Shown here: positions 23,541 through 62,630 of the stretch, in pieces | Layout of the letters: each line of letters opens with the position of its first letter | Numbering within the stretch: position 1 is the first letter of the stretch | NCBI GenBank assembly: GCA_015680685.1 | Contig: MNCI01001743.1 | Span: 92,472 to 156,471, forward strand | Length of the DNA stretch: 64,000 nt | Source of the DNA: Gnetum montanum | Taxonomy: Eukaryota; Plantae; Gnetophyta | Direction of reading: 5' to 3' | The notes under the pieces: model-generated | Seen by the model: only the letters and a program-made list of their open reading frames with translations | Database searches by the model: none | Told to the model about the DNA's origin: nothing | Made by a program: the position numbers and the translations under genes

Positions 23541-24317
23541 AGATGCAGAGCTAGATGACTGTAAATGCTCATCTCACAGTAGCAGCAGCAAAAACAGCAT
23601 CAGCTAAACGATGAAGAAGTTAGATTCACATTCAACTTTTAGTTATAGCTTAGCTCTGTTGAGCCTTCTCTTCTTCTGCTTGCTTCCTTGTTTTATTGAG
23701 TCTGCTCTCTGCTACGTTTTGCTTCTCGTAGTGTAGCGTTGCCCTGAATTCAGGCAAGATCATCATGGCTTGCTACAGTGCTTTTCATTTGGACTGCTTT
23801 TTTCTTCTTTTTTTTTGGCCCATGTGATGCGAGAAGGCTAAAGAGTTTTGCTTTATGGTTGTTATTACTACTAGTTCTTGTGTGGGCGGTTGATTTGAAG
23901 AGCAATTCCTACTGCGACCAAGGGTGTAGTGGACCAGTACCTAAAGCTTGACAACTAAGTGAGATATCACATCCGCGATGGCTTTTGTTGCAAGGCTTTT
24001 TTGCCTTTTGCCTTTCCCTATGCATGGTAATTCTGCCACGTTGCCATTTTCTTTTTTTATATATTTAATTTTCATGTGGCCATTTTAGGTAGAAAACTTT
24101 TTATGATTACCTTCAAAGCAATTTAAAAGATGGAAAGTTGAATGAAACTTTAATATAAAATAAGATATTGCACTACAGGGATGACTTGGATAGCATTTCT
24201 GAATGCCAACTTAGAGTGAGAGGAAGACTAGTTCATTCCCAAAACCTGGGAATAGCCTGGTCAGGATTGTAGATTACAAACTTGTGACACAGTGTGCCTC
24301 CTGTGTCTTTACTGTCC

Positions 24318-25400
24318 TTTTTTTTAGCAAAATGGGGGAAAGGATCACCCAGCAGGAACATAACAAAAGGGGTAACACCCCTAAACAAACTTAGACAAAA
24401 CAACTAAACAAACAGAAGGAAAACAGGAAACATGGTTCCCTAGACTGTTAATAGGCAATCATAAAGCACTAACAAAAACAAAACAAAACAAAGAAACTGT
24501 GCACAACTAACACCCCCTACTGCTAGTGGGGCAAATGTGCACACCTGCAGTTCGGCTGGATCTGAGAGTGCAGCAAATCTAGCTGTGCGCAAAGGTCTTG
24601 TGTTTCCACTAAAGCCACCACCTGTTGGAAAATTTTGAATGCCTCCATCTTTCTCGCCCTTTCAACAACAGACCCTTTACCATCCCAATGCAATTTAGCA
24701 AAGGCAAGGCAAATGTGCCAGTGCAATTCTCGCCACATAACTTCATGATTAATCTACATCTGCACATAGGGGCATTTCCCTTTGCTCAGCCACATGGTGG
24801 TGTTTTGTTCATGTGCACATATCAGCTGTAGCTACATCACCTCCTCCTCCTAACACCACCGCTTCCATGGGCCCCCTCCGCCATTGCATTTCCTCCTAAT
24901 GATGCACCCATAGCTCTTCCAGCTATATTTGAAAAGCCTCCTCCCTCGCCTCCCACTTAGCCTCCCACAACCAACGATTGTAGTTCTAGACTCGCTAGCA
25001 GCCACCTCCCTTTCAAGCGCAACCTGCACCCACATCTCAGCCTGCCCCACCCTAGGACCACCAGCATCATGACCAGGCTCCACCCATTTGGCCATAAGCA
25101 CCAAAACAATACACCTAGGAAAAACCTCCTGCACCTCTACAGGCACCGACCATCTACGACGCTGATAGACAACCTGAAAAAGAAGCTAAGACCATACCCC
25201 AACTCCCTCATCATCGTGACAGGACTCACAGCTCTCCATAGAGCCAAGATAAGGCCCAAGTGCTACCCAAAATGTCCTCGCCTTAGCAATGCTAAAAAGA
25301 ACCCTGGAATATTAACTTGGCACCCCATCTGGAGGCACTTCAAGAACACAAAATGAACCCTCTAAAGCTTCGACACATCCTTAGTCTAAGCAAAGAAGAT
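24318..25400 (-). mobile_element. 5'-truncated LINE (extension, J-domain, 3' UTR, A-tail)
   Basis: HFVFLKCLQMGCQVNIPGFFL; WLSKGKCPYVQM*INHEVMWRELHWHICLAFAKLHWDGKG...AFKIFQQ...PNCRCAHLP; T-tract at 24318-24325; same subfamily as 33686-37783. Confidence 0.85.
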
Positions 25401-26707: not shown

Positions 26708-27582
26708 TAATTTAATTTAATTTTTTGAGGAAATAGTCGAGATTGTATTACTGAAAAAAAATATAGTACAAGAGATTACAAATAGCGGGTCATCAACAAT
26801 GGCCCATGTGTGGTGGGGTAACACCCCAAAACCAGCATGCCAAACTCCACATCAGTCCAATGGAGCTCCGTGTTCACAAAACTAGCGGCCTGCTGGATTC
26901 CTTGCATGGCCGACTCCCGTCTGTTCTGATCCGCAATCGACGTCCCCACATCTAGATGGAAGTGTGCCAAGGTTCGGTAGATGTGGCGTCTGAGCTCCCC
27001 CTAGGAGCTATCGTAATTGATGCCCAGGATGAGGTATGGCCACCGTCCACCTCTAAGCCATTGGCAGGCGCTATGTTCATGTGCCCTGTCCAGTTAGCTC
27101 TGCTGCTGAGCCTCCTCCTCCTGTTCTCGTTCACGCTGCACCTGTTAAGCCTCCTCGCGTTCCCTTCGAGTGGTCTCCTCTTGCATCAACTCTTCTCTCA
27201 CTTGGGCCCGAATCTCATCCACCAGCCGTGCCCAGGTTGCATCGACCAGGAGGGTTTGTTGCCTCACCCTCTCCTACTCCCTTTCTCTAAATTTGGCCTC
27301 CAACTCGGCCCGTGCCTACGCGAGGGATTCCTACCATTTTGCCTCCCATTCCTGCCGCTTAGCCTTGCGTGCCGCAGTTGCGACCTTCTGTGCAGCTTGC
27401 TGCAACTCCTCGTCAAAGGTCTTAGGCAATGACGACTCTGGTGCTGCGATCCTAGTTAGGGGGCATCATCCTCACTGGCTACGTCGTTTCCGCATGTAAG
27501 TCATTACAGGGGGGGTCCAAAGGTTCTCCCAGTTAGCCAAAGATGATGGGCTAGGCGTAGGGGGGCGCTCTGCGAGTTTTCC

Positions 27583-27614
<32 letters not shown>

Positions 27615-30600
27615 NNNNNNNNNNNNNNNNNNNNNNNNNNNNNNNNNNNNNNNNNNNNNNNNNNNNNNNNNNNNNNNNNNNNNNNNNNNNNNNNNNNNNN
27701 NNNNNNNNNNNNNNNNNNNNNNNNNNNNNNNNNNNNNNNNNNNNNNNNNNNNNNNNNNNNNNNNNNNNNNNNNNNNNNNNNNNNNNNNNNNNNNNNNNNN
27801 NNNNNNNNNNNNNNNNNNNNNNNNNNNNNNNNNNNNNNNNNNNNNNNNNNNNNNNNNNNNNNNNNNNNNNNNNNNNNNNAAAGTAAGTCCGGTCGTTGTG
27901 CCAGTTAGAGAAGAACACGTCATCTGCAAGGTCTGGGTCACCAACCAGCCACTGCAAGGGGCCGTTCCAACCACACTATTCCACCATTTGCCAGAGTTCT
28001 TCCTCCACCTCGAATGCAGCGCAATAAAGTTTGAATGTCAACGTGACACCCATCACTGCCTCGATCTCATTCCACGTGCGAAGAGCCTGGGAGGTTACCA
28101 GCACGGGTAGGGGCAACCTGATCTATTGGAAAACAGTGCGATTTCTTGTCTTCCATGCTACCCATAAAAGTAGCATGGCCTGAGAGTCGCCAGCGTGGTT
28201 CAAGGCCCAACCACCCCTGTGCCTGCATCACACACGCGTGGCGGCAGAGCGTCTGCTAGGGCTTCAAATCCTGCACCCCCGCCTCCCAACGACGATATTT
28301 CGCATTCATAACATATATCCACTGGGCTAGTTCCCCATGCGGGCGCATGAAATGAAGCAACAGGCGTTGCTGTCCCAGCATTAGCTCATCCTTGAACGAC
28401 AAGATGCNNNNNNNNNNNNNNGGGGGCATGCAACCCGTTCCCAACTCACAAGGTGGATTTTGCTCCCCGCCCCCCTCTACCCCCTGTCCAGACGAAATGC
28501 CTAATCTACATGTTGATCTTGTTAATGATGGCGCTCAGAGGGTTGGCAACTACTACCACAAACCGGGTAATCGCAGTGAGAATTCCTGTTGCCACAACCA
28601 ATCACCCCTTCGAAGTCAGGAAAAGATTTGCCCAGTGACCCATCCTCCGTTCAACCTTCTCTAACAATGTCCCCCAAGACATGCTCCGCCCCCACTGGAA
28701 GACTGGGATACCCAGGTAGGTGTCCTTGACCGTTCCGGGCAGAATGTTCAGGACTTGCACAACCTAGTTTTTAATCTGTGAATCCACATTAATAAAATGA
28801 GTTGAGGATTTAGCCCTATTAATCTCCAATCCCAACTCATCTACGAGTCGGGAAAGTCTGATGTTGATGCACCGTGCTTGTGGGACCCCCGCACGACTAA
28901 GCAACATTGTGTCATCCGCATAGTGCTTGGCCCAACATTCCACCCCCGCAATGTCTAATCCGTCAACCCCTAACATTCTACAATAATGTTGCATCACATC
29001 CATAGCTATAATGAACAGCAGGGGCGAAAGAGGGTCCCCCTACCGTAACCCCCTCCCAAGCAAGGAGAGACCCCACAGTCCCCCCCGCCNNNNNNNNNNN
29101 NNNNNNNNNNNNNNNNNNNNNNNNNNNNNNNNNNNNNNTGGATGCAAAGCTGGATAAAACCCTGGTCAAAACCCTTCCATTGCATAATGGTAGCTAGGGC
29201 TTCCCAGCTGAGTGTGTCATATGCCTTGGTAATGTCAAGCTTGAGACAGAGCCCAAGGAAACCCGTAGTCTGAAGAGAATGGAACAACTCTTGCATGAGG
29301 AGAACCTAATCTTGCAAGGTTCGGCCTTGCACAAACCCTGCTTGATTAACTCCCACCACCTTGGGCATGAGTGGCACAAGCCTATGCACAATCAATTTGG
29401 AGAAAACCCGAATCAAAACATTGCAAACCCCAATAGGATGGAACTGTTCTAGGCGGTGTGCCTCTGTTTCCTTTGAGATGCACACAATTCGAGAGCAACT
29501 AATCTCCCTTCGAACCTGCCTCTTGATCAACATAAGGTTGAAGGCGTCTCGGATATTGGATCCCACAATATCCATGAAGGCTCGAAAGAACTCAAGACTC
29601 TAGACATCTGGACTAGGCGGCTTCCCTCCCAGCATGTTGTTGATGGTGGCAATGAGTTCCTACCAAGAGAACGGGGTCAACAACCGCGTGTTGTCTTCCT
29701 CGTTCAGCACCTACGCAATTTGGACCGAAATGGGTTTTGGTGGGTCATTTGGCCCAAATCCTCTCCCAGTATTAAGTCAGCTCCCTAGCGACGCTCTGTG
29801 GTTCATCAATAATCCCCCCATCCCGGGTGTGTAAACAACTTGGTTGGCCCCATCCTTGTGTCTTAGCAACGGCAAAGAAAAACTTCGTTTCCCTATCCCC
29901 TTCTCGGAGCCATCTAACCCATGACCTTTGTTTCCAGTATGTCTCCTCTTCTAGGTCAAGGCCTTGAAGTTGCCGCAGAATGTTCTACTCTTCTTCATGT
30001 AAGTCCTCCCCAGCCTCCTAGCTGGTCTAGATCTGAATAAGTTTATCTCGGAGTGCCCTACGACCCGTCCTAAAAGAGAATTTGTCCTCCACTGGTAGGG
30101 CTCGAATGGCCCATTTCAAGCAAAGCAAATCATCCTTAAGGAAGTTCCTGGGGTCTCCCTAGCCTGGTCGATAATCCGCCCAAATGTCCTCAACTAAAGG
30201 CCTCAACCACAGCTTAGACAACCAAGCTACCTCAAAAAAAAATGATCACAGGGTCTGGGACCTTTCCAGCCCGAGCGAACAAACCAGGGATTGATGATCC
30301 GAAGCGACCCTTTCCTATCTCGTAACCCGCACGGAAAATTAGAGGAGGAGGTCAAAACTAATGCAAACCCGGTCAATTCGGGAAAGGACGCAGTTCAGGC
30401 CTTTCCTCCTGTTGCTCCAGGTGAACTGGCAGTTCCCAATGGGTAGATCCACCAGTGAGTGGACCATCAGGAAATCTTGAAACTCCTACGTGCCCGGGGG
30501 GCAGCCCCATTGGATTTTTCCACAAATGCAAGCACTGGTTGAAGTCCCCAACGATTAGCCATGCCCAATGGTCTAGCACCAGCATCACCACGTGTTCCAG

Positions 30601-32368
30601 TTCTGTGCCCCATAGAAGTTGGTCAGCCAAATCCCCTGGGAGGGGATATGAATGGTCATGGTCCATTGTGAGGTGTCAACCAACGTATCGTAGCGAGCCA
30701 AGATAGCAAGACCTCTTGCCCAACCCATGCAGGGGTGCACGTGGGTTTTCCAGCAGCCATCCCAAAGGAGATGGTGAGATTCCATCGCTTGCAACTTGGT
30801 TACTTGGAGGCAAACAATGTCACATTCTTCATCCTGGACAATTCTACGCATGGTATTTCTTTTATAGGGTGTACCCTATCCCTTACAATACCAGCTGAAA
30901 ATCTTCATGCATGCCCAAATGAGCGGCGCTGGTAGACCTCCCAAAGGGTCTGCTGTAACCCCAAATCAATATTTCGTTGAGCTTGTCTAGCCCTGGACCA
31001 ACTATCACTCGGGCATCCGGGGCGACCCTCCCCCTCTCACACCACTGGGCAACATCCCAAGTCCTCGGNNNNNNNNNNNNNNNNNNNNNNNNNNNNNNNN
31101 NNNNNNNNNNNNNNNNNNNNNNNNNNNNNNNNNNNNNNNNNNNNNNNNNNNNNNNNNNNNNNNNNNNNNNNNNNNNNNNNNNNNNNNNNNNNNNNNNNNN
31201 NNNNNNNNNNNNNNNNNNNNNNNNNNNNNNNNNNNNNNNNNNNNNNNNNNNNNNNNNNNNNNNNNNNNNNNNNNNNNNNNNNNNNNNNNNNNNNNNNNNN
31301 NNNNNNNNNNNNNCAATCGGCCCTTACAGCCCACCGTGGCCCAGTCCCCACCCTCAAACATCTGCTTGGCTCAGTCCCACAACCGCACAGGCCGTGTCCT
31401 CCAAAATCGGCAATCCTCCTCCTGGTGACCAAGTTTCCCACAGCAAGCACATCCTTCTCCCTTGCCCTCTCTGGCCTTCGTTCTTCATTCAAGGCCTGGC
31501 TCAACCTCTAGGTTCTCAAACTCGACATGGAGGTGTTCCTCCCTGCTTGGGAGCTCCAGAACGATTTCCCAGATGAGGTCCTTATCCAACAGCCTTTGCC
31601 AAACGCAGAAACGGGCGAAGCCCATACACACCATTGATTGTGTGACATTATCAAAACCAATGAACTCCCCAAAGAACCCAACCACCTTCTCTAGGAACTC
31701 CAGGTTCCACATCTCCCATGGGATCCCGAAAATCCTCATCCACACTGGGGCCCTGGTGAACAAGTTTATCTCGTGATGCGCCCCTGGGCACTACAGGGTT
31801 AAAGCTAGCCCCTGAGCCCTGTAAAACCACAGTTACCCCAGCAACACCAAGTCCCTAGCCTGCTAGGATGGAAAGATGAACAGAAGCAAATCCTTGGACA
31901 GACTCCAGACTTCTACCTGGCCAACCTTCAAATGTTCTTGCACCCACTTGCGGATTAACTCCATCCACGAGCAAGCACCCCTAGAAACGAAATGGCCAAT
32001 GAGGCTTCGTTGCATGGTGCGGACTCCCTCCGTCGGGGGCTTGCTGACCCGGAGCCATAAGGTGTGGTCAGCCTAGGAATGTGCTTCGATACCCCAATAC
32101 GGCACTCGCAACCCTTCCCCCCACCCTGCGGTCTTGTGTGGCCCAAACCGAGTTCTCTCCATCGCCTTTGCCCGCTCCCGCGTTCGCCTAAAACTCTGCC
32201 CCTATGTTCATCGGACTCTCCTCTCTTGTGCCGCCACTGCTATGCTCCAACGCTCGCTTGCTGTTACTGTGCTCCAGTGCCCACCTATTGTTCCTACTGC
32301 TGTTGTGCTTCGGTGCCCACCTCCATGGCTCAAGGATATTTTGCTGTGCTAGTCCGGATCTTGCCGAA
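26708..32368 (-). mobile_element. Near full-length LINE with J-domain ORF2 (gapped; sister of 56265-62270)
   Basis: ORF1 (APVWMRIFGIPWEMW), APE (MKIFSW, WLIVGDFN), RT (KLDITKAYD, HYADD), extension, coiled coil, J-domain at 27042-26855; candidate TSD TCTTAATT at 26700-26707 and 32369-32376. Confidence 0.92.
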
Positions 32369-36600: not shown

Positions 36601-37783
36601 GCCTTATCTTGGCCCTATCGAGGGCCACAAGTCTTGCCACCATGACAAGGGAGTTCAAGACAACGTCTCAGTTAACTTTCTAGTTTGTCTATCGACATCG
36701 TAGACAGCTGATTCCTATTGAGGAGCGAGAGGTTCCACCTAGGTGTATTGTTCTAGCACTCATGACCAAACAAGTGAAACCTAATCAAGATGTGGATGGA
36801 CCTAGGGCAAGGCAGGCTACGATGCAAGTGCAAGTTGCGCTAGAGAGAGAGGTTGATGCTAACAAGGCAAGAACGAATGAGCACCGAGTGTGGGAGGCCA
36901 AGTGGGAGGCAAGGAAGGAGGCTTTTAGAAGGGAGTTGGAAGAGCTACAGGTGGCCCATCAAAAGGAAATCTAGTGGCAATGGCAATGGCAGCAGATTTG
37001 AAGGCCTATATCCGGTGAGAGCTTATAGAGGAGTTGTAGCAGGAGAAGCTACAGCGACAAACCCTTGAATGAGAAGCGAAAGACCAATGGGCCAAGGAGC
37101 ATTAGGAGGAAGCGCTGCAGCTGCAACTGAGATATTCACATGAACAAAACACCACCATGTGGCTAAGAGAGGCGAATTGCCCCTATGTGGGGATGCAAAT
37201 TAATTGTGAAGTTATGTGGCCGGAATTGCACCAGCACATTCGCCTGGCCTCTGCTAAACTGCATCCAAATGGCAAAGGCTCTGCTACTGAAAGCGCGAGA
37301 AAAGCCAAGGCATTCAAAATTTTCCAACAGATGGCAGCTTTTGTGGAGACGTAAGACCTTCGCATGCAGCTGGACTTGCTGCATTCTTAGATCTAGCCAA
37401 ACTGCAAGTGTGCACATCTACCCCACCAACATTACAAGGTAGCAGATGTGCACAATTTCTTTGTTGTTGTTGTTTTTTTCTTTTTCTATTAGTGCTTTTT
37501 GGTTGCCTTGTGTGTTGGAGGGGGGGTGTGTTTCTGCTATTAATGGTCCAAGGGTCCTATATCCTAGTTTCCTTCTATTTGTTTACTTGATTTCTCTCAG
37601 TTTGTAAGGGGGTTTTATCCCCTTTGCAATGTTCCTATGGGGTGATCCTTTACCCCTTTTGGTGGGGAGGTGGATACAACCCACCTCAGTTTTGGTTGTT
37701 GTGGTGCTTGGGGGTTTCTTCCCCTCTTTGTTCCTTCTAAGTTGTACATATCTTTTTAATACATTCCCGAAATTTTGCTCAAA
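33686..37783 (+). mobile_element. 5'-truncated LINE with RT, zf-RVT, extension and J-domain
   Basis: SGPDNWP, KAYDTINW, GLRQGNPL, HYAND, WKARNRLVF, J-domain 37178-37430; A-tail; 18-bp TSD AAAAATCTTACAAACATC at 33668-33685 and 37784-37801. Confidence 0.93.
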
Positions 37784-47479: not shown

Positions 47480-50400
47480 TTTTTTCTTTTATTTCTTTAT
47501 TTTTTTGGAGGGGTGTTGGATGTCTACATGATAGACAATCAAAAAGATGGGGTAGGGGTGAGAAATCCCCCAATTCTTAGAAGCCCAAACCAACCGTAGA
47601 GTTGCTGGGTAACAAAACAGAAAGGGGATATGAATAACCACCTAGGTCAAATCCCCAGCACAACATAACAAGTGGCATGAATGGCCCAAGAAGCCCAAAC
47701 ACCAACATCTCCTTGACCAAAAAACAAAATCTAAAGCATGTAATCACACAAGCGGTAGAACAATACGCACACAGTTACACGTGCTACCTACGAAATCAGT
47801 CACCAATATCACATTTGACCTCCGTTTTAACTAAATTACATGCTTCATTAATTTGTTGCAGCTCTGCTTGTTTGTTATCCATTTCTTCTTAGGTGAGGCA
47901 GTGGGCCTTGTCAGCGTAATGAGAGACTACCCTGCATCTCACCAAAGCTTTAGTGCTCTAACAACTGGAGTAATTGTTAATACCCAACACAGCATATGGT
48001 CATCTACCCTCCTCAAGCAAGAGATGACAAATGCTCTATAGGATTTTGCAAAATCATTTCTCAAATTCTCTCATCTCCACCTCCTCAGCAAGCTTTTGTT
48101 GCACCTCCTCTTGCTGTCTCCCTTAGTTCTTTTCTATCCACTTCTTCCTAGCGCCTCCTTCATTCTATGCCTCTCGTCCCCCTCTTGCTAGCAACTCTTC
48201 ATCTCCCTCTCCTACCATTGATTCGGCTCCATCTCCTATTGTCATCATCACTCCTTTGCCCTTCTAGCCTCATCCAAAAGCCTCTATTTAATTTATTCCC
48301 ATGGAATCTAGATCTCCACCCTCTTGCACTTTTCGATCTCTTATTTAAAGCACACCTCCACGTCTTCGGTAGATCTAAAGATGTCTGCTTTTGCAAATTC
48401 CTTTCTCTCACCTAATCTGAACCTTGAACTCACAAATGTGGAGTTCACCCTAGGCTTCAACATTAGCCTTGATCTCCTCCCTAAGCTTTGTCCCCATCGC
48501 TTACCTAAGAGACTCCAACGTCATCCCAAAGAGGCAAAGCAGCAATTCAACAGGAAAGTGGATTAGAACCAGCAAGTTGTATGCAAGATTGTCTAGACCA
48601 TGTCCTAAATTTGCAATTGTGATGCTGATATAGGCCCCACAAGCCCCTTGGAAGCCTTCATCTGTGTAGCCAAACACCTCAGCACCCCTAGCAACAACCT
48701 AAGAGGCCACAGAAGTGCCAATGTGGTTGTGGACCTAACAAGTGTACGACTTCCTAAACCCATTGTTATCATATACTGGGGATATGAATTGCTTCGTAGC
48801 CCTAGACCCGAGATTATGTTCCAATTTGGCTGCCCCTAGAGGAGCAAGATGAGGCCCAATTGCTTGGTTGTCTACTTTCATTAAAGGCAGACGAGAAAGA
48901 ATCTATAAACATTTACCTGCCCCACAACATCATACATTTCAAGGAGGCAAAGTGAATGACCTAAAGCTTAGAAAGGTGATCTATTTGAATGAAGAAGACT
49001 TCAACAAGCTATGCACCCCTTTACCTCAACAATTCAAGCTTTAACCTCAAAACCTAACCACTAGATGTGGTTAGAATGGCATGGAAAAGAAGTGACTTGA
49101 CAAAATGATTTCACCCACTAATGATAATTCCAATGTATTGTGCAATGTTGTTTTCTGTAAGTTGGATATCAACACCTTTGAAATAAGTGTTGCAGCCCCT
49201 CCAACAACTGAAAAATTGGGTGACATTCATGTCCCCATCACCCTTCAGCAATAGCAGAAAGATGTCCCAACTAATAGCAAGAATGAAGCCCCAAAATTTT
49301 TATCGTCCCTAGAGGGAACGATGTCGGGTTTAAAGGTCAATGTAACACCCATGATGATAACTGCCTCTTTCCATAGTACAATATACTTGGTAGCGAAGAC
49401 AAAAGGAGATGGAATAGGACTAGACTTGAAAATGCAATGATTCTATGCCTTACAAATGACCCAATCGATGACAATGTGCAAGCGATCACTACTGAGAGCA
49501 TGTGTGTTCACAACAACGCAACAACTCCAAACCCACATGCTGCAAGGACATACATAAATAAGGTGGGCTACAATCTCAACCGTAATATCATTATAAAGTA
49601 CGCAGGTCCCCTCAATCTGCATTACCCTATAACCAAGAAAAGACTTAGTCAGGGATCAAATCTCTCCTAAGAAGCCAACTGAAGATTTCTATGTTGTCTG
49701 TGATACAGCCCTTCCACATTCCATTCCAGTTTAGGACTCTGTCATATTTTATAATGAGCAGCTCTTTACTACTAGGGCATATGAGAACTTGTAACTCCCT
49801 AATCATTTGTCAATGCTTGCAGAGGACCTTCCAGAACTAAGAATCCCCTGCTTCCAGTGTCCAAGGTATATATTTTTATAGCATTATTTTTATCCACAAA
49901 GTATCATCCTGATCTTCTATCTGTTGTATAAGCTAATAATGGCCTATGAAGATACAATCTCCAAATCTATGAAGATACAATCTCCAAATCTAGGTATCCC
50001 TAGGTCCCCACTCTATTATGAAGGTCTCTTGTCCCTATTCAGTCTACAAAAGAATATCCCTTAGCATGTCTTTTGTTGAGATTGCACCAAACACAAAAAC
50101 AAGAGAACTCCATACAACTCGTCAATGTTGTAAACCTATCCAACACAATAAAATCTCCAAAGAAACTTGCAAAAGTCTACAGAAAAGGGTCATACCAAGG
50201 CACACCATAAACCCTAATTCACATGGGATTCCAATCAAAAAGTGTAGGGGTCCCTATGCACCCTAGGCTGCTACTGGGTAAACAATAAATCCCTAGCCTT
50301 GAAAAACTCAAGGCCTCCTTTGAGGAAGACATTCATGTCAGTAACAAACTAAAAAAAAGGTCATTAACGATCCAAACTTCTACCTCCAACACCATCCAAG

Positions 50401-50785: not shown

Positions 50786-53700
50786 TTTTTTTGAGACAAC
50801 GTTCAGGATTATATTACAAAGGAAAAAAGGAGAAACTGTACAATCAAAATGTTGTATACATTGCAAAAGAAAGGGGGCCCCACCCTCAGGGGGAAAGCTC
50901 CCCCAAGATACCCAAGACTTGACAGACTATTGGCACTTCAAAATGAGATTTCAAAAATAAAAACATGACAAGCCCAACCCAGGAAACAACAATAGAAAAA
51001 AAATGGGCCCCAAGACAAAACTCCAACAAACAAGGGGCCAGATAGACTGCCTAGCCCCCCCAAGACCCGCTAGAGTCTCTTAGGCAAATTCTGACAAGAG
51101 CAATCAGAAATTTCCGGATTGTGAATTTCATTTAGCAGCCCGAAGTGATGTTCTAAATCAACAAAGGCTGCCTCTTCTTGGAAATCCTTGAAAGTAGCCT
51201 CTTTCTTAGCATGCTCGACTGCTGATCCTTTTCCATCGAGATGCAGCAAAAAGGAGGACCAGCAGATATGTCGGCAAAGAGTCGACCACGAACACTCTTT
51301 ATTAATATACAGCAACATGTAGGGGCAACATCCCTGTGTAAGCCATGTTCTAGCATTCTGGGCAAGAGCCTTATCGATCTGCCCGCACATCTACTCCGCT
51401 TCCACTTGCTCCTGCTCTTGCCACCTATTACAACCTCTCCCACTCCTACTGCTCCACCACCTCTTACTTCAACTCCTCCCGAACCTAGGCCCTCAACTCA
51501 TCAATTAGTGCCACCTAAGCATTCACATTACGCAAAGCCTATTGCCACATCAACTCCCGCTCCCTTTTCCTAACTTGATCCTCCATTTGGGCCTACATGC
51601 GTTGAAAAGCCTCCTCTCTGGCACACCATTTAGTCTCTCACATCCTGCATTCATCAACCCTAGCCTACTCTGCAGCCTCTTCCGCTAAGCGCAACAACTC
51701 GTCCAAGGGTGTTTGCATCTCAATTGAGCCAAAGCCCTCCAGCTCAACCACAAACTGCATTGTCATAGCCGGACCCTCCTCTTTCTCAAACTCAACCCTT
51801 CTTTGTGCCATCGTCTAACATGAATAAACCATTGTACATGGTGGTCTAGGCCCCAACGGTGGCCGCTATGGAGGCCTAGGTGATGCAGCCCACCACAGTG
51901 CAAGAATGAGCCCAGAATGCTGACCTCTACATTGTTTGCACAGTGTCTCCAAAAAGAATTTGGGCAAATTGACACAGCACTCAAGCCTCATGCATTTAAG
52001 CAAGGAAAAATGTGTCCCTTGTAGTTTGGACACATTGCCAGAGTGGACAACGAACCGGTCCACTAGATCAACCGCCTATCGCTAAATCAATGACAAGACC
52101 AATTTTGGCACTTGGCCACTACTCATATGTGGCATGACCCCCGTGAAGAAAATTTCAACATCCTATAGCTCAGGAACCATAGGCAACACCATTTCACCCA
52201 TGGCAGGGGTTTCCAAATACATAGCTAAAGTCACCTCTATCAAAATTATACAAGTGCCATGAAAGACTATAGCATTTATGTGCCAATTATTGAAAAAGGA
52301 CTCATTTGGTAAGGCCATGTCCCCCTGCAGACGAGAAAAGAGCTCATCCCACCTAATTCTCTCAACCATTCTCCAAAGCTCCAAGTTAGCCTGATATGCC
52401 TTGCAAGCCGACTCATATGTCGACGCCACACACAAGAAGTCGAAAACATAATATGTGCAAGCGGCAAGATCCACTACAACCGAAAAATAGCACAGTTGCG
52501 GGCCTTCAAAATTTCCCATAAAATAAGCCCCACCTCAGAATCGCCATTTAAATTTGCCGACCCATGCAAACACGTAGCTTACCACGTGTGCTGCACGTAC
52601 TAGCATTGATCAGAAAAGTGTAGCACTATCTCAAGGCTACTACAACATAATGGACAAGTATCATTAATCTACAACCCTCGCCACTGTAACAACATAGGCA
52701 CTGATAGCGCATTATGCATAATAAGCCAAAGAAACATTTTGATTTTCTCCGGTAACCTACCCAACCAAATAGCTTTCCAGCCATCAACCGATGGGTACGT
52801 ATCCCGGATAAGTCACCACAAGGGCTCCCCCAACCAACGTCACGCCAACGCAAGTTGCACATGAGTGCAAAATGTCCTCCACAATAATGAAACACATGGC
52901 CCCACCTCCCAACATGTGTATTTTGAGGCCATTATTTGAATCCATTGGGCAGCCCCCTCCAAGTTTTGTACAAATCTCATCAGTAGCCATTGACAGCCCA
53001 TCAGAAGCTCCTCTTCAAATTTAAAAATCCCTAAACCCCTACTTCTCGATGTCGTGTGATAGTATCCCACCCAATTATTTGGTTAATATGCTGAATAATG
53101 GCGTAGTGGGGCAAGGGGGGTGGGGGGGTGCCGCCACCAAGGCAACAAACCTAGCAATAGCAGAAAGAACGCTAGAAGCAAGAATAATTCTTCCCTTCCA
53201 AGTGAGGAAGCGGTTGACCCAATGCCCAACCCAACTCTCCAACCTTTGAATCAACTGCTATCACATCTGCTTTCTCCCCCATTCAAAAAGGGGGATCCTA
53301 AAGTACAAATCCATCACTGACCCACAACTCCTACGAAATACAACTCCCAACCCTAGGGTTGACACTAATGAGGTGAAGCGAAGACTTCCCATAGTTAATT
53401 TCCAGCCCAAGTTCCACAGCTAGTCGACTAAGAGCCCGATCAATCCCCTTCACCTGAGGAACCTCCACCCTAGAGAGCAGCATGGTGTCATCAGCATAGT
53501 GCTCAGCAAGGCACTCTAGTCCCACAATCTCTAGCCCATGGACCCCCTCAGCCTTACAGTAATATTAGAGTGTATCCATCACTAAAATAAAAAGCAAGGG
53601 AGACAAGAGGTCCCCCTACCTCAAACCTCTGCCAGGGGAGGAAAACCCCCACAACCTCCCCNCAAGTGAATGCACAAACTAACAAAACATGGATCAAATC

Positions 53701-55910: not shown

Positions 55911-56319
55911 TCTTGCAATTTTTGAATTACTCCAGTATTAAAACTACAAAGGCTCGAACAGGCAATACTAAACACTCGTATTTATTTTTCTAAATTCACA
56001 CAAACTTATGCATAATGATTCTATGTCTCTTTCTTCAAACATTCTTTAATCCACTACAATATAGATTTCAAAGGTGTACATATATGCTTCATATTCAAAG
56101 TATAACTCACATTGGGTTTGTTTCATATTTGCAAATGTGTAACGGCGAACAACATTCATAGTGCAAGTGCAGACAAAGGATATTAGTCTTTTGGCTTTAT
56201 CTTTTGTTGTTCATGAGTTTCTTTTTACAAGATTTTTTCAATTTGGCTTTTAACACTACCATACTTTTGAAGATCAGATCGGATCGTAAGTCTTTTTCTT
56301 TATTATTCCTAAGACCTCC

Positions 56320-57516
56320 GGGTCAGCAAGCCCCCGATGGAGGAAGTCCACACCAAGCAATAGAGCCTCATTGGCCGTTTCGTTTCCCGAGGTGCTCGCC
56401 CACAGATGGAGTTAATCTGCAAGTGGGTGCAAGAACACTAGAAGGTTGGCCAGTGGAAGTCTGGAGTTTGTCTGAGGATTTGCTTCTATTCATCTTTCCA
56501 TCCCAACAGGCTAGGGACTCTGTTGCTGGGGGGGACCGTGGTTTTACGGGGCTCGGGGGCTAGCATTAACCCCGTGGTGCCCGAGGGCACACCACAAGAC
56601 AAACTTGTTTGCCAAGGCCCCGATGTGGATGAGGATTTCCAAGATCCCATGGGAGATGTGGAACTTGGAGTTCCTGGAGAAGGTGGCGGGATCTTTGGGG
56701 AGTTCATTGCTTTCAATAGCATCACACAATCAATGGCACGGATGGGCTTCGCCTATTTCTACGTTTGGCAAAGGCTATCGGATAAGGACCTCATCCGGGA
56801 AATCGTTCTGGAGCTCCCAAGCGGGGAGGAACACCTCCAGGTCAAGTTTGAGAAACTAGAGGTTGAGCCAGGCCTTGAACGAGGAACAAAGGCCCGAGAG
56901 GGCAAGGGAGAAGGATGTGCATGCTGTGGGAAACCCGATCACTAGGAGGACTGCCGATTTCGGAGGACACGACCCGTGCGGCCACGGGACCAAGCCAAGT
57001 AGATGTTTGAGGGTGGGGACCGAGTCACAATGGGCCGTAAGGGCTAACTGCACCCNNNNNNNNNNNNNNNNNNNNNNNNNNNNNNNNNNNNNNNNNNNNN
57101 NNNNNNNNNNNNNNNNNNNNNNNNNNNNNNNNNNNNNNNNNNNNNNNNNNNNNNNNNNNNNNNNNNNNNNNNNNNNNNNNNNNNNNNNNNNNNNNNNNNN
57201 NNNNNNNNNNNNNNNNNNNNNNNNNNNNNNNNNNNNNNNNNNNNNNNNNNNNNNNNNNNNNNNNNNNNNNNNNNNNGCGGCCCTAGGCGAATGGGTGAAC
57301 GTGGTTAGGGGGAGCATCAAGTCCCGTCAGCCACAGGAGCAGGAACCCACACTCAAGGACTTGGGATGTTGCCCAGTGGTGCAAGAGGGGGAGGGTCGCC
57401 CCAGATGCCCGAGTGAGAACCGGTCCAGGAGTAGACAAGCTCAATGGAATATTGATTTGGGGTTACAGCAGACCCTCCAGGAGGTCTACCAACGCCACTC
57501 ATCCAAGCATACATGA
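56320..57516 (+). pseudogene. LINE ORF1 (DUF4283/RRM-like region plus CX2CX4HX4C knuckle)
   Basis: SLIGRFVSRG, APMWMRISKIPWEMW, CACCGKPDH*EDC, terminal NIDLGLQQTLQEVYQR. Confidence 0.85.
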
Positions 57517-60500
57517 AGATTTTCAGCTGGAATTGTAGGGGACAAGGTACACCCTATAAAAGAAATACCCTGCGTAGAATTGTCCAGGATGAAGAATGTG
57601 ACATTGTTTGCCTCCAAGAAACCAAGTTGCAGGCAATGGAATCTCACCATCTCCTTTGGGATGGCTGGAAAACCCACATGCACCCCTACATGGGTCGGGC
57701 AAGAGGTCTTGCTATCTTGGCTCGCTACGACATGACGTTGGTTGACAACTCACAATGGACCATGACCATCCATATCCCCTCCCAAGGCATTTGGCTAACC
57801 AACTTCTATGGGACGCAAAATTAGGAACAGAGGCTACAGGAGATGGAACACGCGGCAATGCTGGTGCTAGACCGTCAGGGATGGCTAATCATTGGGGACT
57901 TCAACCAATGCTTGCATTCATGGGAAAAATCCGGTGGGGCTGTCTCCCGCCCCCCCCCCCCCTCCCCCAATGAGCACACAGAAGTTTCAGGATTTCCTAA
58001 CAGTCCACTCGCTGGTGGATCTGCCCATTGGGAACTACCAGTTCACATGGAGCAACAGGAGGAAAGGCCCGGACCACGTCCTTTCCCGAATTGACCGGCT
58101 CTGCATCAGTTCCGACCTCCTCCTCCGATTTGCCACGGGGGTTATGGGACAGGAAAGGGTCACTTTGAATCATCGATCCCTGGTTTGTTCACTTGGGCCA
58201 GAAAGGTCCCGGACCCCGCGACCATTTCATTTTGAGGTAACCTGGTTGTCTAAGCCGTGGTTGAGGCCATTAGTTGAGGACATTTGGGCAGACTACCGAC
58301 CAAGCAAGGGAGACCCCAGGAACTTCCTTAAGGATGGTTTGCTTCACCTGAAATGGGCCATCTGGGGCCTACCAGTGGAGGACAAATTCTCCTTTAGGAC
58401 AGGTCGCAGGGCGCTCCGGGATAAGCTTATTCAGATCCAGACTAAATAGGAGGCTGGGGAGGACTTACATGAAGAAGAGCAGAACATTCTACAACTTCAA
58501 GGCCTTGACTTAGAGGAGGAGACATACTGGAGACAAAGATCACGGATCAGATGGCTCTGAGAAGGGGACAGACAAACAAAAATTTTCTTTGTTGTCGCTA
58601 AGACACAAGGATGGGGCCAACCAAGTTGTTTACACACCCAAGACGGGGGGATTATTGATGAACCACAAAGCGTCGCTAGGGAGTTGACTCAATACTGGGA
58701 GAGGATCTGGGCCAAGCAACCCACCAAACTTATTTCAATCCAAATTGCGCAAGTGCTGCACAAGGAAGACAACATGTGGTTGCTAACCCCGTTCTCTTGG
58801 TAGGAACTCATCGCCACCATCAACAACATGCCGGGAGGGACGACGCCTAGTCCAAACGGCTGGAGTCTTTAATTCTTTTGAACCTTCATGGATATTGTGG
58901 GACCCAATATCTGGGACGCCTTCAACCTTATGCTGGCCAAGAGGCAGGTTCGAAGGGAGATCAACTGTTCTCAAATTGTGTGCATCCCAAAGCAAACGGA
59001 GGCACACCACCCAGAACACTTCCGTCCTATCAAGGTCTACAACATTTTGATTTGGGTTTTCTCCAAATTGATTGTGCATAGGCTTGTGCCACTCATGCCC
59101 AAGCTGGTGGGAGTTAACCAAGCAGGGTTTGTGCAAGGCCAAACCCTGCAGGATCAGGTTCTACTCATGTAGGAGGTGTTCCATTCTCTTCGGACTACGG
59201 GTTTCCCTGGGCTCTGTCTCAAGCTCGACATTACCAAGGTGTATGACACACTCAGCTGGGAAGCCCTGGCTACCATTATGCAACAGAAGGGTTTTGACCA
59301 AGGTTTTATCCAGCTTTGCATCCACATGTAGTCATCCGCTAGTTTTTCCTTTAACATGGGGAGGCAGTTGTGGGGTCTCTCCTCACCTCAAAGGGGGTTA
59401 CGGCACGGGGACCCACTTTCGCCCTTGCGGTTCATTATCGCTATGGATCTTATGCAACATTATTGTAGAATGTCGAGGGTTGATGACTTAGACATTGCGG
59501 GGGTGGAATGTCAGGCCGAGCACTATGCGGATGACACAATGTTGCTTAGTCATGCGAGGCTCCCACAAGCACAGTGCATCAACATCGCACTTTCCCGACT
59601 GGCAAATGAGTTGGGATTGGAGATTAACAGGGCTAAGTCCTTAGCTCATTTTATTAATGTGGATTCACAGATTAAAAACCACGTCGTGCAAATCCTGAAC
59701 ATTCTACCCGTAACGGTCAAGGACACCTACCTAGGTATCCCACTCTTCCAGTGGGGGAAGAGCATGTCTTGGGGGCCATTGTTGGAGAAGGTCGAACGAA
59801 GGATGGGTCACTGGGCAAATCGTTTCCTGACTCGGAAGGGGCAATTGGTTGTGGTAGTGGGGATTCTCACAGCGATTACCTAGTTTGTGGCAGCAATTGC
59901 CACCCCTCCGAACACCATCATTAACAAGATCAACATGCAAATCAGGCGTTTCGTCTGGACGGGGGGCAAAAGGAGGGGGGGCAAAATCTACCTTGTGAGT
60001 TGGAAATAGGTCGTGCGCCCCCATAACGTGAGGGGGCTGGGCATCTCGTCGTTCGAGGATGAGTTCATGTTGGGACAGCAACGCCTGTTGCTCCGTTTCA
60101 CGCGCCCGCATGGGGAACTAGCCCAATGGATCCATGTTATGAATGCGAAATATCGTCGTTGGGAAGCAGGGGTGCAGGATTCGAGGCCCTGGCAGATGCT
60201 CTACCACCACACGCATGTGATGCAAGCATAGGGGTGGTTGGGCCTTGAACTGCGCCAACTGATGGTGGCCAGGTACCCTGTAGGTGTCAGGCTAGCAACA
60301 GATTTGGAGGGGACGGCTCCCCGAGAAGATCAAAATGCTCCTATGGTTACGGCGAAATGACGCATTACTAGTTCGCACGCTTCTGCGCAAACGCGGCCTT
60401 AATGTGGACGACACATGTCCCCTGTGCGGCACTGCACCAGAAACAGTTCGACATTTCATCTCCAATTGCACGTACATGCGCACCACGTGGCACTCAACCG

Positions 60501-62053
60501 GTGCGACCCCCCGATGCACCTCACCAGCAACTCTTGGGCCACGCTACTTTTATGGGTAGCATGGAAGACAAGAAACCGCATTGTTTTCCAACAGATCAAG
60601 CTGCCCCCACCCCCGCTAGTGGTTTCCCAGGCTCTTCGCGTGTGGAACAAGATCGAGGGGACGATGGATGTCACGCCAACATTCGAACCTGACTGCATCA
60701 CGTTCCAAGCGGAGGAAGAACTCTGGAAAATGGTGGAACAGTGTGGCTGGAACAGCCCCTTGCAACAGCTGGTTGGTGACCTAGACCTTGCAAATGACGT
60801 GTTCTTCTCTAACTAGCACAACAACCAGACTTACTTTCAGGGGAGAGAGGTAACCGTCACAAAATCTTCGATTGCCAGGTGTCTCAGGGCCCAAGCCGCT
60901 AACAAGGTCATTTTGCCTTCCACACAAGGGTTGCAAGATGCGGAAATGTTCTTCGATGGGCCGGTGCCATGCACGCAAAGCAGACAAGTGCCCAAATCCT
61001 CCTGACCCTAAATCTAGGCCCGAGCAGCAGATCTTGTGGATAGATTTTTTGTCCAGTCTGGCAACGGCTTTAAACTCCAGGGCATCCATTTTGCCTTCCT
61101 CCATTGCCTGAAGTTAGGGCATCAGGTTAACTTACCCCGATTTTTTCTAGTGGCCCTACAACTTCAGAGACGAGGCCGTCATTTCAGGCTCATCCTGGCC
61201 TTATGGCAGAGGGCAAAGGGAGGGCAAAACTTGCAGAGTGGCCCCTCGCGGGGGGCTCCCCCACCTGGCCCATCATCTTTGGCCAACTAGGAGAACCCCT
61301 GGACCCCGCCTGCAATGACTTACATGCAAAAATAGCATAGCCAATGAGGATGACGCCCCCCAACCAGTATCGCAGCGTCGGAGTCGTCACCGTCAAAGAC
61401 CTCCAAGCGCAATGCGAACTATGAAGAGGAGTTGCAGCAGGCCACACAAAAGACCACAACCATAGCACGCAAGGCTGAGCTACAGGAATGGGAGGCAAAA
61501 TGGCAGGAATCCGTCGTGTAGGCACAAGCCAATTTGGAGGCCCATTTTAGAGAAAGGAAGCAGGAGAGGGTGAGGCAACAAACCCTCCTGGCTGACGCAG
61601 CCTGGGCCCAGCTGGTGGATGAGATCCAGGCCCAAGTGAGAGAAGAGTTGCTGCAGAAGGAAACTGCCCGAAGGGAGCGCAAGGAGGCTGAACGGGCACA
61701 GCTTGAATGTGAACAGGAGGAGGAGGCTCAGCAGCAAAGCCAACTAGACCAAGCACACGAACACAGCGCACGCCAATGGCTTAGAGGTGGATGGTGCCCA
61801 TACCTCATCCTCGGCATCAATTGCGACAGCTCCTAGGGGGAGATCAGACGCCACATCCGCCGAACCTCAGCGTGCTTCCATCCAAATGGGGGGGACGTCG
61901 ATGGCGAATCGGAACAGACGGGAGTCAGCCATGCAAGGAATCCAACAGACCGCCAATTTTGTGGACACGGAGCTCCATCGAAACACGTTGGATATTCTTC
62001 ATGAGCTACGACGCCCACATTGTGCCTTCCATCAGTTGTCGACAAACCCCTAG
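57513..62053 (+). pseudogene. LINE ORF2: APE - RT - zf-RVT - accessory domain - coiled coil - J-domain (~1500 aa)
   Basis: MKIFSWNCRG, CLQETK, IIGDFN, SRIDR; KLDITKVYD, RGLRHGDPLSP, HYADD, YLGIPL; CPLC..ET..H...C; one reading frame from WKTRNRIVF (~60560) to FHPNG (61879-61887). Confidence 0.92.
61795..61995 (+). other. DnaJ-type J-domain at the end of LINE ORF2
   Basis: CPYLILGINCDSS*GEIRRHIRRTSACFHPNG and RESAMQGIQQTANFVDTELHRNTLD align without gaps to the J-domain consensus blocks [32 protein letters not shown] and [25 protein letters not shown]. Confidence 0.8.
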
Positions 62054-62479
62054 CAGGGTCGCTGCTTTTAGCCCGCGGGGGTCGCTGTTGCCCCCCCCCC
62101 CAGTGGTTCGGTTGTGCTCCCCCTCCCCCCCTATGGTGGATGCCTTCCATTTCGTGGGTGCCTCCCATTTCGTGGGTGCCCCCTATGAGTCTCAAATTTT
62201 AATGAGCGGGAGTCTCAAATTTTAATGAGCAGGAGTTTCAAATTTTTGAAGTTGGGACACTATTTATACATGTACTTGCATGCTCATTCCCTTGCCTTTG
62301 CAGCTTCGGCTGCCTGGCCACATTGCCTAAACACACTGATGAGGGGTGAAAGTCCCCGAATACGTTTTGTGTCACAACAGACGTTGTGCAATGCTTTGAG
62401 CTTCTATTACTTTCTGTTTTACAGTTTCTGCAGTATTTCGCTCAGCCTCCCCGTTCTTTTCCTTGATGCACGAGATCAA

Positions 62480-62630
62480 ATCTCTAAAATTTCTAAAAGT
62501 CCTAAAATTTTAAGTCCAAAAATTTTAAGTCCAAAAATTTAAGTCCAAAATTTTAAGTCCTAAAATTTTAAGTCCAAAATTTTAAGTCCAAAAATTTTAA
62601 ATCCTAAAATTTTAAGTCCAAAATTTTAAG
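62480..62630. repeat. Minisatellite, 14-15-bp unit AAAATTTTAAGTCC(A/T), about 10 copies
   Basis: Read directly from the sequence. Confidence 0.9.

What the first reader, a model, noticed from the sequence alone, without database searches (positions are those of the whole stretch)
57513..62053. L1-clade LINE whose ORF2 ends in a DnaJ J-domain (retrotransposon-encoded Hsp70 co-chaperone module)
Seen: after zf-RVT and the WKTRNRIVF helix, the same reading frame runs about 1.3 kb further, broken only by stop codons mostly explicable as single transitions. It passes through a globular-looking domain and an E/K/R/Q coiled coil into CPYLILGINCDSS*GEIRRHIRRTSACFHPNG, then, after a +1 G in a G-run, RESAMQGIQQTANFVDTELHRNTLD. 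Both blocks align gap-free with the J-domain consensus (YxILGV, EIKK..R, HPD loop, FxxIxxA...RxxxD). Known: plant L1 ORF2 usually ends after zf-RVT or RNase H; J-domains stimulate Hsp70 through HPD; polyomavirus T antigens carry one. Inference: this family recruits host Hsp70 in cis, for ORF2p folding, RNP remodelling or chromatin effects. I know of no report of this architecture, but cannot search.
Basis: partly seen in the sequence, partly recalled or inferred. Interest (0 to 1): 0.95.

Follow-up and report, generated by a model that had tools for sequence, protein, structure and literature searches.

The report
Plant LINE ending in a J-domain
This is a dead copy of a plant L1-type jumping gene whose reverse-transcriptase protein carries an extra tail ending in a diverged DnaJ-type J-domain, the module that switches on Hsp70 chaperones, and I found no published report of this combination for a retrotransposon.

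Summary
Positions 57513-62053 are a decayed plant L1-type LINE with endonuclease, RT and zf-RVT domains. After the WKTRNRIVF motif the frame runs on for 1.3 kb through a conserved unknown domain and an E/K/R/Q-rich helix into a J-like block, 61798-61993. That block is broken by one stop and one extra G.

The window holds at least seven more copies from several diverged lineages with the same tail. They confirm three things:
- The frameshift is private to this copy.
- Six of the ten stops are sense codons in other copies.
- The open frame ends at one conserved stop.

Amino-acid changes between lineages are far rarer than silent ones in this frame only.

Single decayed copies do not reach Pfam's DnaJ cut-off. 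An 8-copy profile does match a J-domain alignment over its whole length:
- hhalign gives 94.7% probability, P 5.8e-8, score 43.9, against a shuffled maximum of 18.7.
- A MAFFT-only profile has J-domains as its seven best PDB hits, best E 0.007.

No copy has an intact HPD, although most variants are one transition away. Still open are fusion versus a separate downstream ORF, and Hsp70 recruitment, which is inferred only. I found no homologue in the protein collections searched and no published report. First readers of this scan noted the same architecture many times elsewhere in this genome.

The parts
56316..57502 (+). 5' part of the element (ORF1 region). An assembly gap of N lies at 57056-57286.
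   Evidence: 85-89% nt identity to the matching part of copy 2 (32054-30919). No Pfam hit on two ORFs.
57513..57821 (+). ORF2 start, first part of the apurinic-type endonuclease domain
   Evidence: Pfam Exo_endo_phos E 1.5e-10
58882..59880 (+). Reverse transcriptase domain, broken by stops
   Evidence: Pfam RVT_1 E 0.0036 and E 2.1e-9 on two stop-free pieces
60296..60556 (+). zf-RVT zinc-binding domain. In this copy it lies in frame mod 3 = 2.
   Evidence: Pfam zf-RVT E 1.7e-15; frames
60670..61206 (+). Conserved accessory domain of unknown family, in the position where some plant L1s carry RNase H
   Evidence: tblastn of c1 pieces to other lineages gives E 1e-10 to 1e-24. FFxNW-to-LILAL spacing is exactly 387 nt in copies 1, 3 and 5. 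No Pfam or Atlas match.
61207..61416 (+). Poorly conserved linker, holding 4 of this copy's 10 tail stops
   Evidence: Alignment. Length differs between lineages by multiples of 3.
61417..61797 (+). E/K/R/Q-rich helical (coiled-coil-like) segment leading into the J-domain
   Evidence: 50% E+K+R+Q and no P or G over 126 residues. The part just before the J-block (about 20 residues) is predicted helical in the copy-5 model.
61798..61993 (+). Diverged J-domain, helices I-IV, with HPN in place of HPD. Stop at 61834-61836.
   Evidence: hhalign 94.7%, P 5.8e-8. PDB profile search: top 7 hits are J-domains. An in-house J HMM's best hit in the whole six-frame window is here.
61888..61894 (+). G-run with one extra base: a private +1 frameshift inside the J-domain
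   Evidence: Copies 2, 3, 5 and 7 are in one frame here; spacing 141 against 142 nt
61994..62053 (+). Short Cys-containing C-terminal tail (PxCxC..LP type) and the terminal stop at 62051-62053
   Evidence: A stop at about the same place in copies 1, 5, 7, 9 and 10
62054..62630 (+). 3' UTR ending in tandem repeats (18-mer, 23-mer, and a 15-mer x9 at 62497-62630)
   Evidence: TRF. A different, 5'-truncated LINE follows from about 62640.
26860..32054 (-). Copy 2, same family (81-89% nt identity). J-block in one frame at 26860-27099, with HLD.
37115..37429 (+). J-block of copy 3 (diverged lineage), HPN; the element spans about 34404-37450
24526..24837 (-). J-block of copy 7
51076..51390 (-). J-block of copy 5, stop-free 105 aa, HLD
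47766..48020 (-). J-block of copy 6 (very diverged; helix III closest to the J consensus)
23321..23575 (-). J-block of copy 10, stop-free. On its own it gives Pfam DnaJ E 0.033.
4155..4280 (+). Copy 9: a 5'-truncated insertion that starts inside the J-domain and ends at the conserved stop

Best explanation
Positions 56316-62630 are a dead, methylation-decayed copy of a plant L1-type LINE family. The family's ORF2 does not end after zf-RVT. It continues into a conserved accessory domain of unknown fold (about 180 aa), a variable linker, a charged helical segment and a diverged J-domain, followed by a short Cys-containing tail and a conserved stop.

Shown here:
- The tail is an integral, once-selected coding part of the element in several diverged lineages.
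- Its last block is a J-domain homologue in canonical register.

Inferred:
- In active elements the tail was translated as part of ORF2p.
- The loop carried HPD.
- The J-domain docked host Hsp70 and triggered its ATPase next to the element's own protein or RNP. Possible uses are folding the very long ORF2p, remodelling or disassembling the RNP, or acting at the chromatin target.
For: The LINE is confirmed by Pfam: EN, RVT_1 and zf-RVT.

Tail as a family-wide coding module:
- tblastn finds the same tail in copies the DNA search did not match (blastn word 9, E<=1e-5).
- Domain spacing is identical: 387 nt and 141 nt.
- Linker lengths of 303, 291 and 273 nt are all multiples of 3.
- pN 0.36-0.44 against pS 0.70-0.86 between lineages in frame. 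The ratio is 0.84-1.37 in the shifted frames.
- The terminal stop is conserved.
- A 5'-truncated copy starts inside the J-block.
- The stop after FFSN is TGG in 4 other copies.

J-domain homology:
- Profile A1 against PDB: best hit is the DNAJC8 J-domain, E 0.051, in register.
- Profile A5 (alignment by MAFFT only): the top 7 hits are all J-domains, best E 0.0068.
- Copy 10 alone against Pfam DnaJ: E 0.033, profile positions 3-60 of 63.
- A J HMM built here from 161 bacterial and viral J-domains has its three best hits in the whole six-frame window on J-blocks of copies 1, 10 and 2.
- hhalign of the 8-copy alignment against the J alignment: 94.7%, P 5.8e-8, score 43.9. Shuffled columns give mean 8.8, maximum 18.7 (n=200). 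Most sub-sets tested also match, all in the same register.
- The Y-to-H spacing is 26 residues, as in the J consensus built here.

Context: Human L1 ORF2p co-purifies with HSPA8 and HSPA1A (PMC5821459).
Against: - No single copy reaches Pfam's gathering score, and most give no DnaJ hit at all.
- No copy has HPD. The variants are HPN, HLD, HPN, HLD, HWD, YAD and HLA.
- One placement in the best hhalign alignment (copy 10) was guided by the J HMM. Without copy 10 the values are P 1e-5 and 82%.
- Lineages 3, 5, 7 and 9 alone give only P 0.089.
- Structure prediction was uninformative.
- Every copy aligned across the linker has a stop or frameshift in it.
- Copies 1 and 2 share four stops.
- There is no intact copy, no expression data and no homologue in the protein collections searched.
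Confidence: 0.7

Rival explanations
1. Same element and the same J-domain, but the coiled coil plus J-domain form a separate downstream ORF (ORF3), translated on its own rather than fused to ORF2p.
For: - The linker at 61207-61416 is poorly conserved.
- It holds at least one stop or frameshift in each of copies 1, 2, 3 and 5.
- A first-reader note on another window describes an extra ORF downstream of ORF2 (s1-833458; unchecked).
Against: - No stop position in the linker is shared between lineages.
- Linker lengths differ by 12, 18 and 30 nt, all multiples of 3.
- The accessory domain and the coil are in one frame in copies 1, 3 and 5.
- At about 2% stops per codon, one stop in 40-65 codons is expected by decay alone.
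Confidence: 0.2
2. The block is not a J-domain. It is a family-specific helical segment that resembles one by chance.
For: - Single-copy Pfam scores are below cut-off or absent.
- For copy 10 an unrelated family (PRTase-CE) scored better than DnaJ.
- Foldseek and VIA-align gave no J-domain match.
- The search of 1.84 billion protein representatives returned no J protein at E<=0.001.
Against: - A database-wide profile search puts seven different J-domains at the top, all in full-length register.
- hhalign score is 43.9 against a shuffled maximum of 18.7.
- Adding diverged lineages raises the score, the behaviour expected of true homology.
- Spacing is canonical and the H..D loop sits in the right place.
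Confidence: 0.1
3. The J-domain is real, but its role is to counter host silencing rather than to chaperone the element's own protein. One route would be diverting Hsp70 from, or mimicking, host J-protein complexes that silence methylated transposons.
For: - In Arabidopsis, MBD5/6 silence methylated transposons through the J-protein SILENZIO. Its HPD motif engages HSP70 (PMC10651127).
- The copies here show heavy decay of the type that cytosine methylation causes.
Against: There is no direct evidence. The organism is unknown and no similarity to SILENZIO was tested.
Confidence: 0.1
4. A host J-protein gene fragment was picked up once by 3' transduction or template switching in this copy only.
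For: LINEs do transduce flanking sequence (general knowledge).
Against: - The block sits at the same place with the same spacing in at least 8 copies of several diverged lineages in this window.
- pN/pS of about 0.5 between lineages points to past purifying selection.
Confidence: 0.02

Closest known systems
Plant L1-clade LINEs (EN-RT-zf-RVT, some with an archaeal-type RNase H after zf-RVT)
   Same: The endonuclease, RT and zf-RVT domains come in the same order. Copies are 5'-truncated, and there is a 3' UTR with a simple-repeat tail.
   Different: There is no RNase H. Instead there is a tail of about 480 codons: an unknown domain, a charged helix and a J-domain.
J-domain proteins (DnaJ/Hsp40, Pfam PF00226), for example DNAJC8, the best PDB match
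   Same: The match covers the full J-domain in register: the Y..LG.. start, a basic helix II, the H-P/L-D/N loop, the F..I..A helix III and the R..(L/Y)D helix IV.
   Different: It is very diverged, with three extra residues after the loop. No copy seen has an intact HPD. It is attached to a reverse transcriptase rather than to a client-binding domain.
Polyomavirus T-antigen J-domain and other virus-encoded J-domains
   Same: A mobile genetic parasite carries its own Hsp70 co-chaperone module. IMG/VR holds many viral contigs with DnaJ-type J-domains.
   Different: Those are viral early or auxiliary proteins, not retrotransposon polymerases. No specific similarity was detected (polyomavirus T antigen: Foldseek E 7).
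Other retrotransposons that acquired extra domains: insect R1 LINEs with a C-terminal viral-type helicase (PMC4686597), retrotransposons with DNMT (PMC5890265), orchid Ty3/Gypsy with an m6A demethylase (PMC9289625)
   Same: Modular gain of a host-type or virus-type domain by a retroelement. In the R1 case the gain is at the C-terminal end of ORF2.
   Different: The acquired domain is different. No J-domain case turned up in the literature searches.

Membership tests
J-domain (DnaJ, PF00226) | Significant sequence or profile similarity over the 60-70 aa domain | tested here: met
   Family profile: hhalign 94.7%, P 5.8e-8. PDB profile search: top 7 hits are J-domains, best E 0.0068. Single copies fall below Pfam's gathering score (14.7 against 27.8 bits; none).
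J-domain (DnaJ, PF00226) | HPD tripeptide in the loop between helices II and III | tested here: not met
   This copy has HPN (CAT CCA AAT). Copy 2 HLD, copy 3 HPN, copy 5 HLD, copy 7 HWD, copy 6 YAD, copy 10 HLA. H, P and D each occur at the right place in some copy, and most variants are one transition from HPD. All copies are decayed, so the state in active elements is unknown.
J-domain (DnaJ, PF00226) | Four-helix fold with an antiparallel helix II/III hairpin | tested here: inconclusive
   The AF2 model of copy 5 has helices at 23-29, 35-51, 57-76 and 80-90 in J-like order, but pLDDT is 62. Foldseek and VIA-align gave nothing specific. The single-sequence model of copy 10 is one long helix.
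J-domain (DnaJ, PF00226) | Stimulates Hsp70 ATPase | not testable with these tools
   This needs biochemistry on a natural intact copy.
Plant L1-clade LINE | APE-type endonuclease, then RT, in ORF2 | tested here: met
   Exo_endo_phos E 1.5e-10; RVT_1 E 2.1e-9
Plant L1-clade LINE | zf-RVT domain after the RT | tested here: met
   PF13966 E 1.7e-15 at 60296-60556
Plant L1-clade LINE | 5'-truncated copies and target-site duplications | tested here: inconclusive
   5'-truncated copies are seen at 4155-4280 and from about 62640. Target-site duplications were not searched for.
Plant L1 with RNase H | RNase H domain downstream of zf-RVT | tested here: not met
   No RNase H or RVT_3 hit on any tail piece of four lineages at E<=10

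The most novel reading that the evidence does not exclude
The J-domain is a weapon against the host rather than a folding aid. A LINE-encoded co-chaperone would hijack nuclear Hsp70 to dissolve or out-compete the J-protein-dependent complexes (MBD5/6-SILENZIO type) that silence methylated transposons.
Probability: 0.1. Interest if true: 0.9.

Novelty: new variant of a known kind. Interest (0 to 1): 0.72.

Why it matters
Retrotransposons depend on host chaperones. Human L1 ORF2p co-purifies with Hsp70s (PMC5821459), but I found no report of a retrotransposon that encodes its own co-chaperone module. A LINE family with a built-in J-domain would show that Hsp70 recruitment can limit LINE fitness enough to be hard-wired into the element.

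It would add a new entry to the short list of domains acquired by LINE ORF2, alongside RNase H and helicase. It would also offer a natural handle for testing what Hsp70 does in target-primed reverse transcription or in plant transposon silencing.

Practically, it is a warning for annotation. Decayed copies of such a family could be called as DnaJ-like gene fragments.

Tried and rejected
- **Pfam on stop-free tail pieces of copy 1 and of copies 2, 3, 5, 6 and 7:** no DnaJ hit even at E<=10. Only copy 10 gave a marginal hit.
- **phmmer of copy 10 against PDB:** nothing related.
- **Profile A1 against 1.84 billion protein representatives:** one hit, a NACHT/LRR repeat protein, judged spurious.
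- **The search for homologous proteins with the 137-aa junction piece:** nothing. With an RT piece the best hit was a Pinus taeda RT fragment at 29% identity, so the organism was not identified.
- **ESM Atlas on the J-block and on the accessory domain:** nothing usable.
- **AlphaFold2 of copy 5 with the 11-row alignment:** pLDDT 62. Foldseek against PDB and VIA-align wide gave only generic helical matches. The single-sequence model of copy 10 came out as one long helix.
- **The look-up of sequencing runs:** No reads were laid, so there is no expression or copy-census evidence.
- **MAFFT alignment of accessory-domain fragments (A3):** it stacked non-homologous pieces and was discarded. MAFFT also misplaced the first half of copy 10. 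That half was therefore left out of A5 and was placed by the J HMM only in the script alignment.
- **First J-domain reference set:** all enterobacterial and too narrow. It was replaced by 160 loci from bacterial and viral contigs.
- **Complex prediction:** not used. Only decayed copies without HPD were available, so a negative result would say nothing.
- **Segmental duplication of copies 1 and 2:** rejected. The similarity found stops at the 5' part of the element (56316 against 32054), and no DNA match was found further upstream of it.
- **How broken frames were handled:** frames were never read through by reference. Pieces were searched apart, and X was used at breaks inside scripts only. 

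Full report
**What is at the coordinates**

Positions 57513-62053 hold the ORF2 of a decayed plant L1-type LINE. Pfam finds Exo_endo_phos at 57513-57821 (E 1.5e-10), RVT_1 at 58882-59169 and 59332-59880 (E 0.0036 and 2.1e-9), and zf-RVT at 60296-60556 (E 1.7e-15).

Most of ORF2 lies in the frame with start mod 3 = 1. The first 103 codons and the zf-RVT lie in other frames, so this copy has several frameshifts upstream of the tail. From the WKTRNRIVF motif on, frame 1 runs for 1.3 kb without a frameshift but with 10 stops. It reaches CPYLILGINCDSS*GEIRRHIRRTSACFHPNG. After a run of seven G (61888-61894), the next frame gives RESAMQGIQQTANFVDTELHRNTLD and stops at 62051-62053.

**Is it more than chance?**

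This copy alone would not show it. Frame 1 has 10 stops in 443 codons, frame 2 has 11 and frame 0 has 18. Any stop codon is also one transition away from a sense codon, so that argument carries no weight by itself.

The evidence comes from other copies in the same window. A DNA search finds one sister copy on the minus strand (30908-26860, 81-86% identity; with its 5' part out to 32054, up to 89%). A protein-level search with the stop-free tail pieces finds the same tail in several more diverged copies that the DNA search did not match:
- copy 3, about 35910-37429 (+)
- copy 4, 40124-40650 (+)
- copy 5, 52554-51076 (-)
- copy 6, 49496-47766 (-)
- copy 7, 25397-24526 (-)
- copy 8, 759-460 (-)
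- copy 9, 4155-4280 (+)

A profile scan adds copy 10, 23575-23321 (-).

A frameshift-tolerant alignment of these tails to copy 1 and anchor-motif spacing give the following:
- The accessory domain is exactly 387 nt from FFxNW to LILAL in copies 1, 3 and 5.
- The J-like block is 141 nt from PY to FQQ in copies 2, 3, 5 and 7, and 142 nt in copy 1.
- Six of the ten stops of copy 1 are sense codons in other copies: TGG at 60814, 61015, 61288 and 61834, CGA at 61333 and CAA at 61519.
- Stops tend to fall at CTG/CAG or CpG sites, as expected from methylation-driven decay. This can also explain the four stops that copies 1 and 2 share.
- The open frame ends at about the same place, some ten codons after a PxCxC motif, in copies 1, 5, 7, 9 and 10.
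- Copy 9 is a 5'-truncated insertion that begins inside the J-like block, the usual fate of a LINE's 3' end.

Between lineages, non-synonymous differences are far below synonymous ones in this frame. In the accessory domain and the J-block, pN is 0.36-0.44 against pS 0.70-0.86, a ratio of 0.46-0.58. In the two shifted frames the ratio is 0.84-1.37. The alignments were made at the protein level, which favours the frame somewhat. The J-block alignment has no gaps, however, so it is hardly affected. The tail was therefore a selected coding part of the active elements.

**Is the last block a J-domain?**

Single decayed copies are too weak to say:
- Pfam gives nothing for the pieces of copy 1, or for near-complete stop-free blocks of copies 2, 3, 5 and 7.
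- Copy 10 alone gives DnaJ E 0.033 (14.7 bits, profile 3-60 of 63). An unrelated family scores better on the same sequence.

Profiles are clearer:
- A profile of pieces from copies 1, 2, 3, 5, 7 and 9 (A1), searched against all PDB sequences, has the J-domain of human DNAJC8 as its best hit (E 0.051). The match is in register over the whole domain.
- Adding the second half of copy 10 and two pieces of copy 6 gives A5, still aligned by MAFFT alone. Its top seven hits are all J-domains, with E from 0.0068 to 0.95: DNAJC8, a 'DnaJ domain protein', a type II Hsp40, dnj-12, two DnaJ 2 chains and E. coli DnaJ. All align to profile positions 23/24 to 84-92.

For a direct test I built a J-domain alignment from E. 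coli dnaJ and 160 bacterial and viral loci.
- Its HMM, run over the six-frame translation of the whole window, has its three best hits on the J-blocks of copies 1, 10 and 2.
- On the blocks read through with X at the breaks, it scores 14.1, 13.8, 9.5 and 4.8 bits for copies 10, 1, 2 and 6.
- hhalign of the 8-copy alignment against the J alignment gives 94.7% probability, P 5.8e-8 and score 43.9, pairing columns 26-91 with J positions 6-68.
- 200 column shuffles give mean 8.8 and maximum 18.7, and the reversed alignment gives 13.5.
- Sub-sets behave as homology predicts:
  - Copies 1 and 2 alone give P 4e-5.
  - Copies 6 and 10 alone give P 1.3e-7.
  - The set without copies 1 and 2 gives P 1.3e-6.
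  - Without copy 10, whose first half I placed using the J HMM, the result is still P 1e-5 and 82%.
  - Lineages 3, 5, 7 and 9 alone are not significant (P 0.089).
- The Y-to-H distance is 26 residues, as in the J consensus built here.

I take J-domain homology as about 90% likely.

The structural route did not help. The AF2 model of copy 5 has helices in J-like order but pLDDT 62, and the fold searches gave generic helical hits. The single-sequence model of copy 10 is one long helix.

**The HPD motif**

No copy has it. The codons are CAT CCA AAT (copies 1 and 3, HPN), CAT CTA GAT and CAT CTC GAT (copies 2 and 5, HLD) and CAT TGG GAT (copy 7). Copy 6 reads YAD and copy 10 reads HLA.

H, P and D each occur at the right position in some copies, and most variants are one C-to-T or G-to-A change from HPD. 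An HPD in the active ancestors is therefore the simplest reading, but it has not been observed. I filed this membership feature as not met in the copies at hand.

**Fusion or separate ORF?**

- The junction between zf-RVT and the accessory domain is open in copies 1 and 3 (137 and 107 stop-free codons across it).
- The one stop of copy 1 inside the accessory domain (60814) is TGG elsewhere.
- The weak point is the linker between the accessory domain and the charged helix (61207-61416). It is poorly conserved, and every copy aligned across it has a stop or frameshift there.
- Against a real ORF boundary: no linker stop is shared between lineages; linker lengths of 303, 291 and 273 nt differ by multiples of 3; and both sides are in one frame in copies 1, 3 and 5.

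I put about 70-75% on a single ORF2 and 20% on a separate downstream ORF. A first-reader note on another window reports the latter (unchecked).

**The rest of the tail**

- The accessory domain (about 60670-61206) is conserved across lineages. It matches no Pfam family on any stop-free piece of four lineages, and nothing usable in the ESM Atlas for the one piece tried.
- In particular it matches neither RNase H nor any transposase-type family, as other first-reader notes had suggested.
- The segment before the J-domain is 50% E, K, R and Q, with no P or G over 126 residues.

**Mechanism**

Shown: a LINE family carried a selected J-domain homologue at the end of its coding region.

Inferred from what J-domains do (they dock on Hsp70 through the HPD loop and helix II and trigger ATP hydrolysis; this is general knowledge): the element brought Hsp70 to its own protein or RNP.

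This fits the co-purification of HSPA8 and HSPA1A with human L1 ORF2p (PMC5821459). An alternative target is the host's silencing machinery. In Arabidopsis that machinery uses the J-protein SILENZIO and HSP70 on methylated transposons (PMC10651127).

**Novelty**

- Four full-text searches found no report of a LINE or other retrotransposon with a J-domain.
- The nearest precedents are other domain gains by retroelements (PMC4686597, PMC5890265, PMC9289625).
- The protein collections hold no relative of the tail, and the organism could not be identified.
- First readers of this scan noted the same architecture many times on other pieces of this genome (33 notes). Those notes are unchecked and are not independent evidence.

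I class the finding as a new variant of a known kind.

**Limits**

- All copies seen are dead.
- The J-domain reference set is bacterial and viral only.

Noticed in passing
window 1-64000: The window is a graveyard of related L1-type LINEs: at least ten copies or fragments from several diverged lineages on both strands. Every copy whose 3' end is present carries the J-block.
   Followed up: partly
window 60670-61206 (also 36230-36644, 52429-51869, 49442-49074): A conserved domain of about 180 aa follows zf-RVT and matches no Pfam family and nothing in the Atlas. When the fragments were aligned, MAFFT stacked the 'L..D.FF.NW' and 'LV.RFF' segments on each other. That may hint at an internal repeat.
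   Followed up: partly
window 28190-28198 (copy 2, minus strand): Copy 2 lacks the roughly 276 bp that encode zf-RVT in copy 1 (60251-60526). It also has an N gap inside its accessory domain.
   Followed up: no
window 61345-61353, 61519-61521, 61834-61836 and the matching sites of copy 2: Copies 1 and 2 share four stop codons although they look like separate insertions. Either CpG/CHG hot spots were hit in parallel, or both descend from an already defective master copy.
   Followed up: partly
window 62136-62630: The 3' UTR carries three tandem-repeat arrays: an 18-mer x2.5, a 23-mer x2.6 and a 15-mer AAGTCCTAAAATTTT x9. The last may be the element's simple-repeat tail.
   Followed up: partly
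window 62640-64000: A 5'-truncated LINE of another lineage (65% nt identity to 34404-35596) starts right after the repeat tail and runs off the window.
   Followed up: no
window 56523-56945: The upstream ORF1 region ends in a CxxC..H zinc-knuckle-like motif, but Pfam gave no hit. It is interrupted by the N gap at 57056-57286.
   Followed up: no
window 61994-62050 and the equivalents in copies 5, 7, 9 and 10: A short conserved PxCxC..LP tail lies between the J-domain and the terminal stop. Its role is unknown.
   Followed up: no
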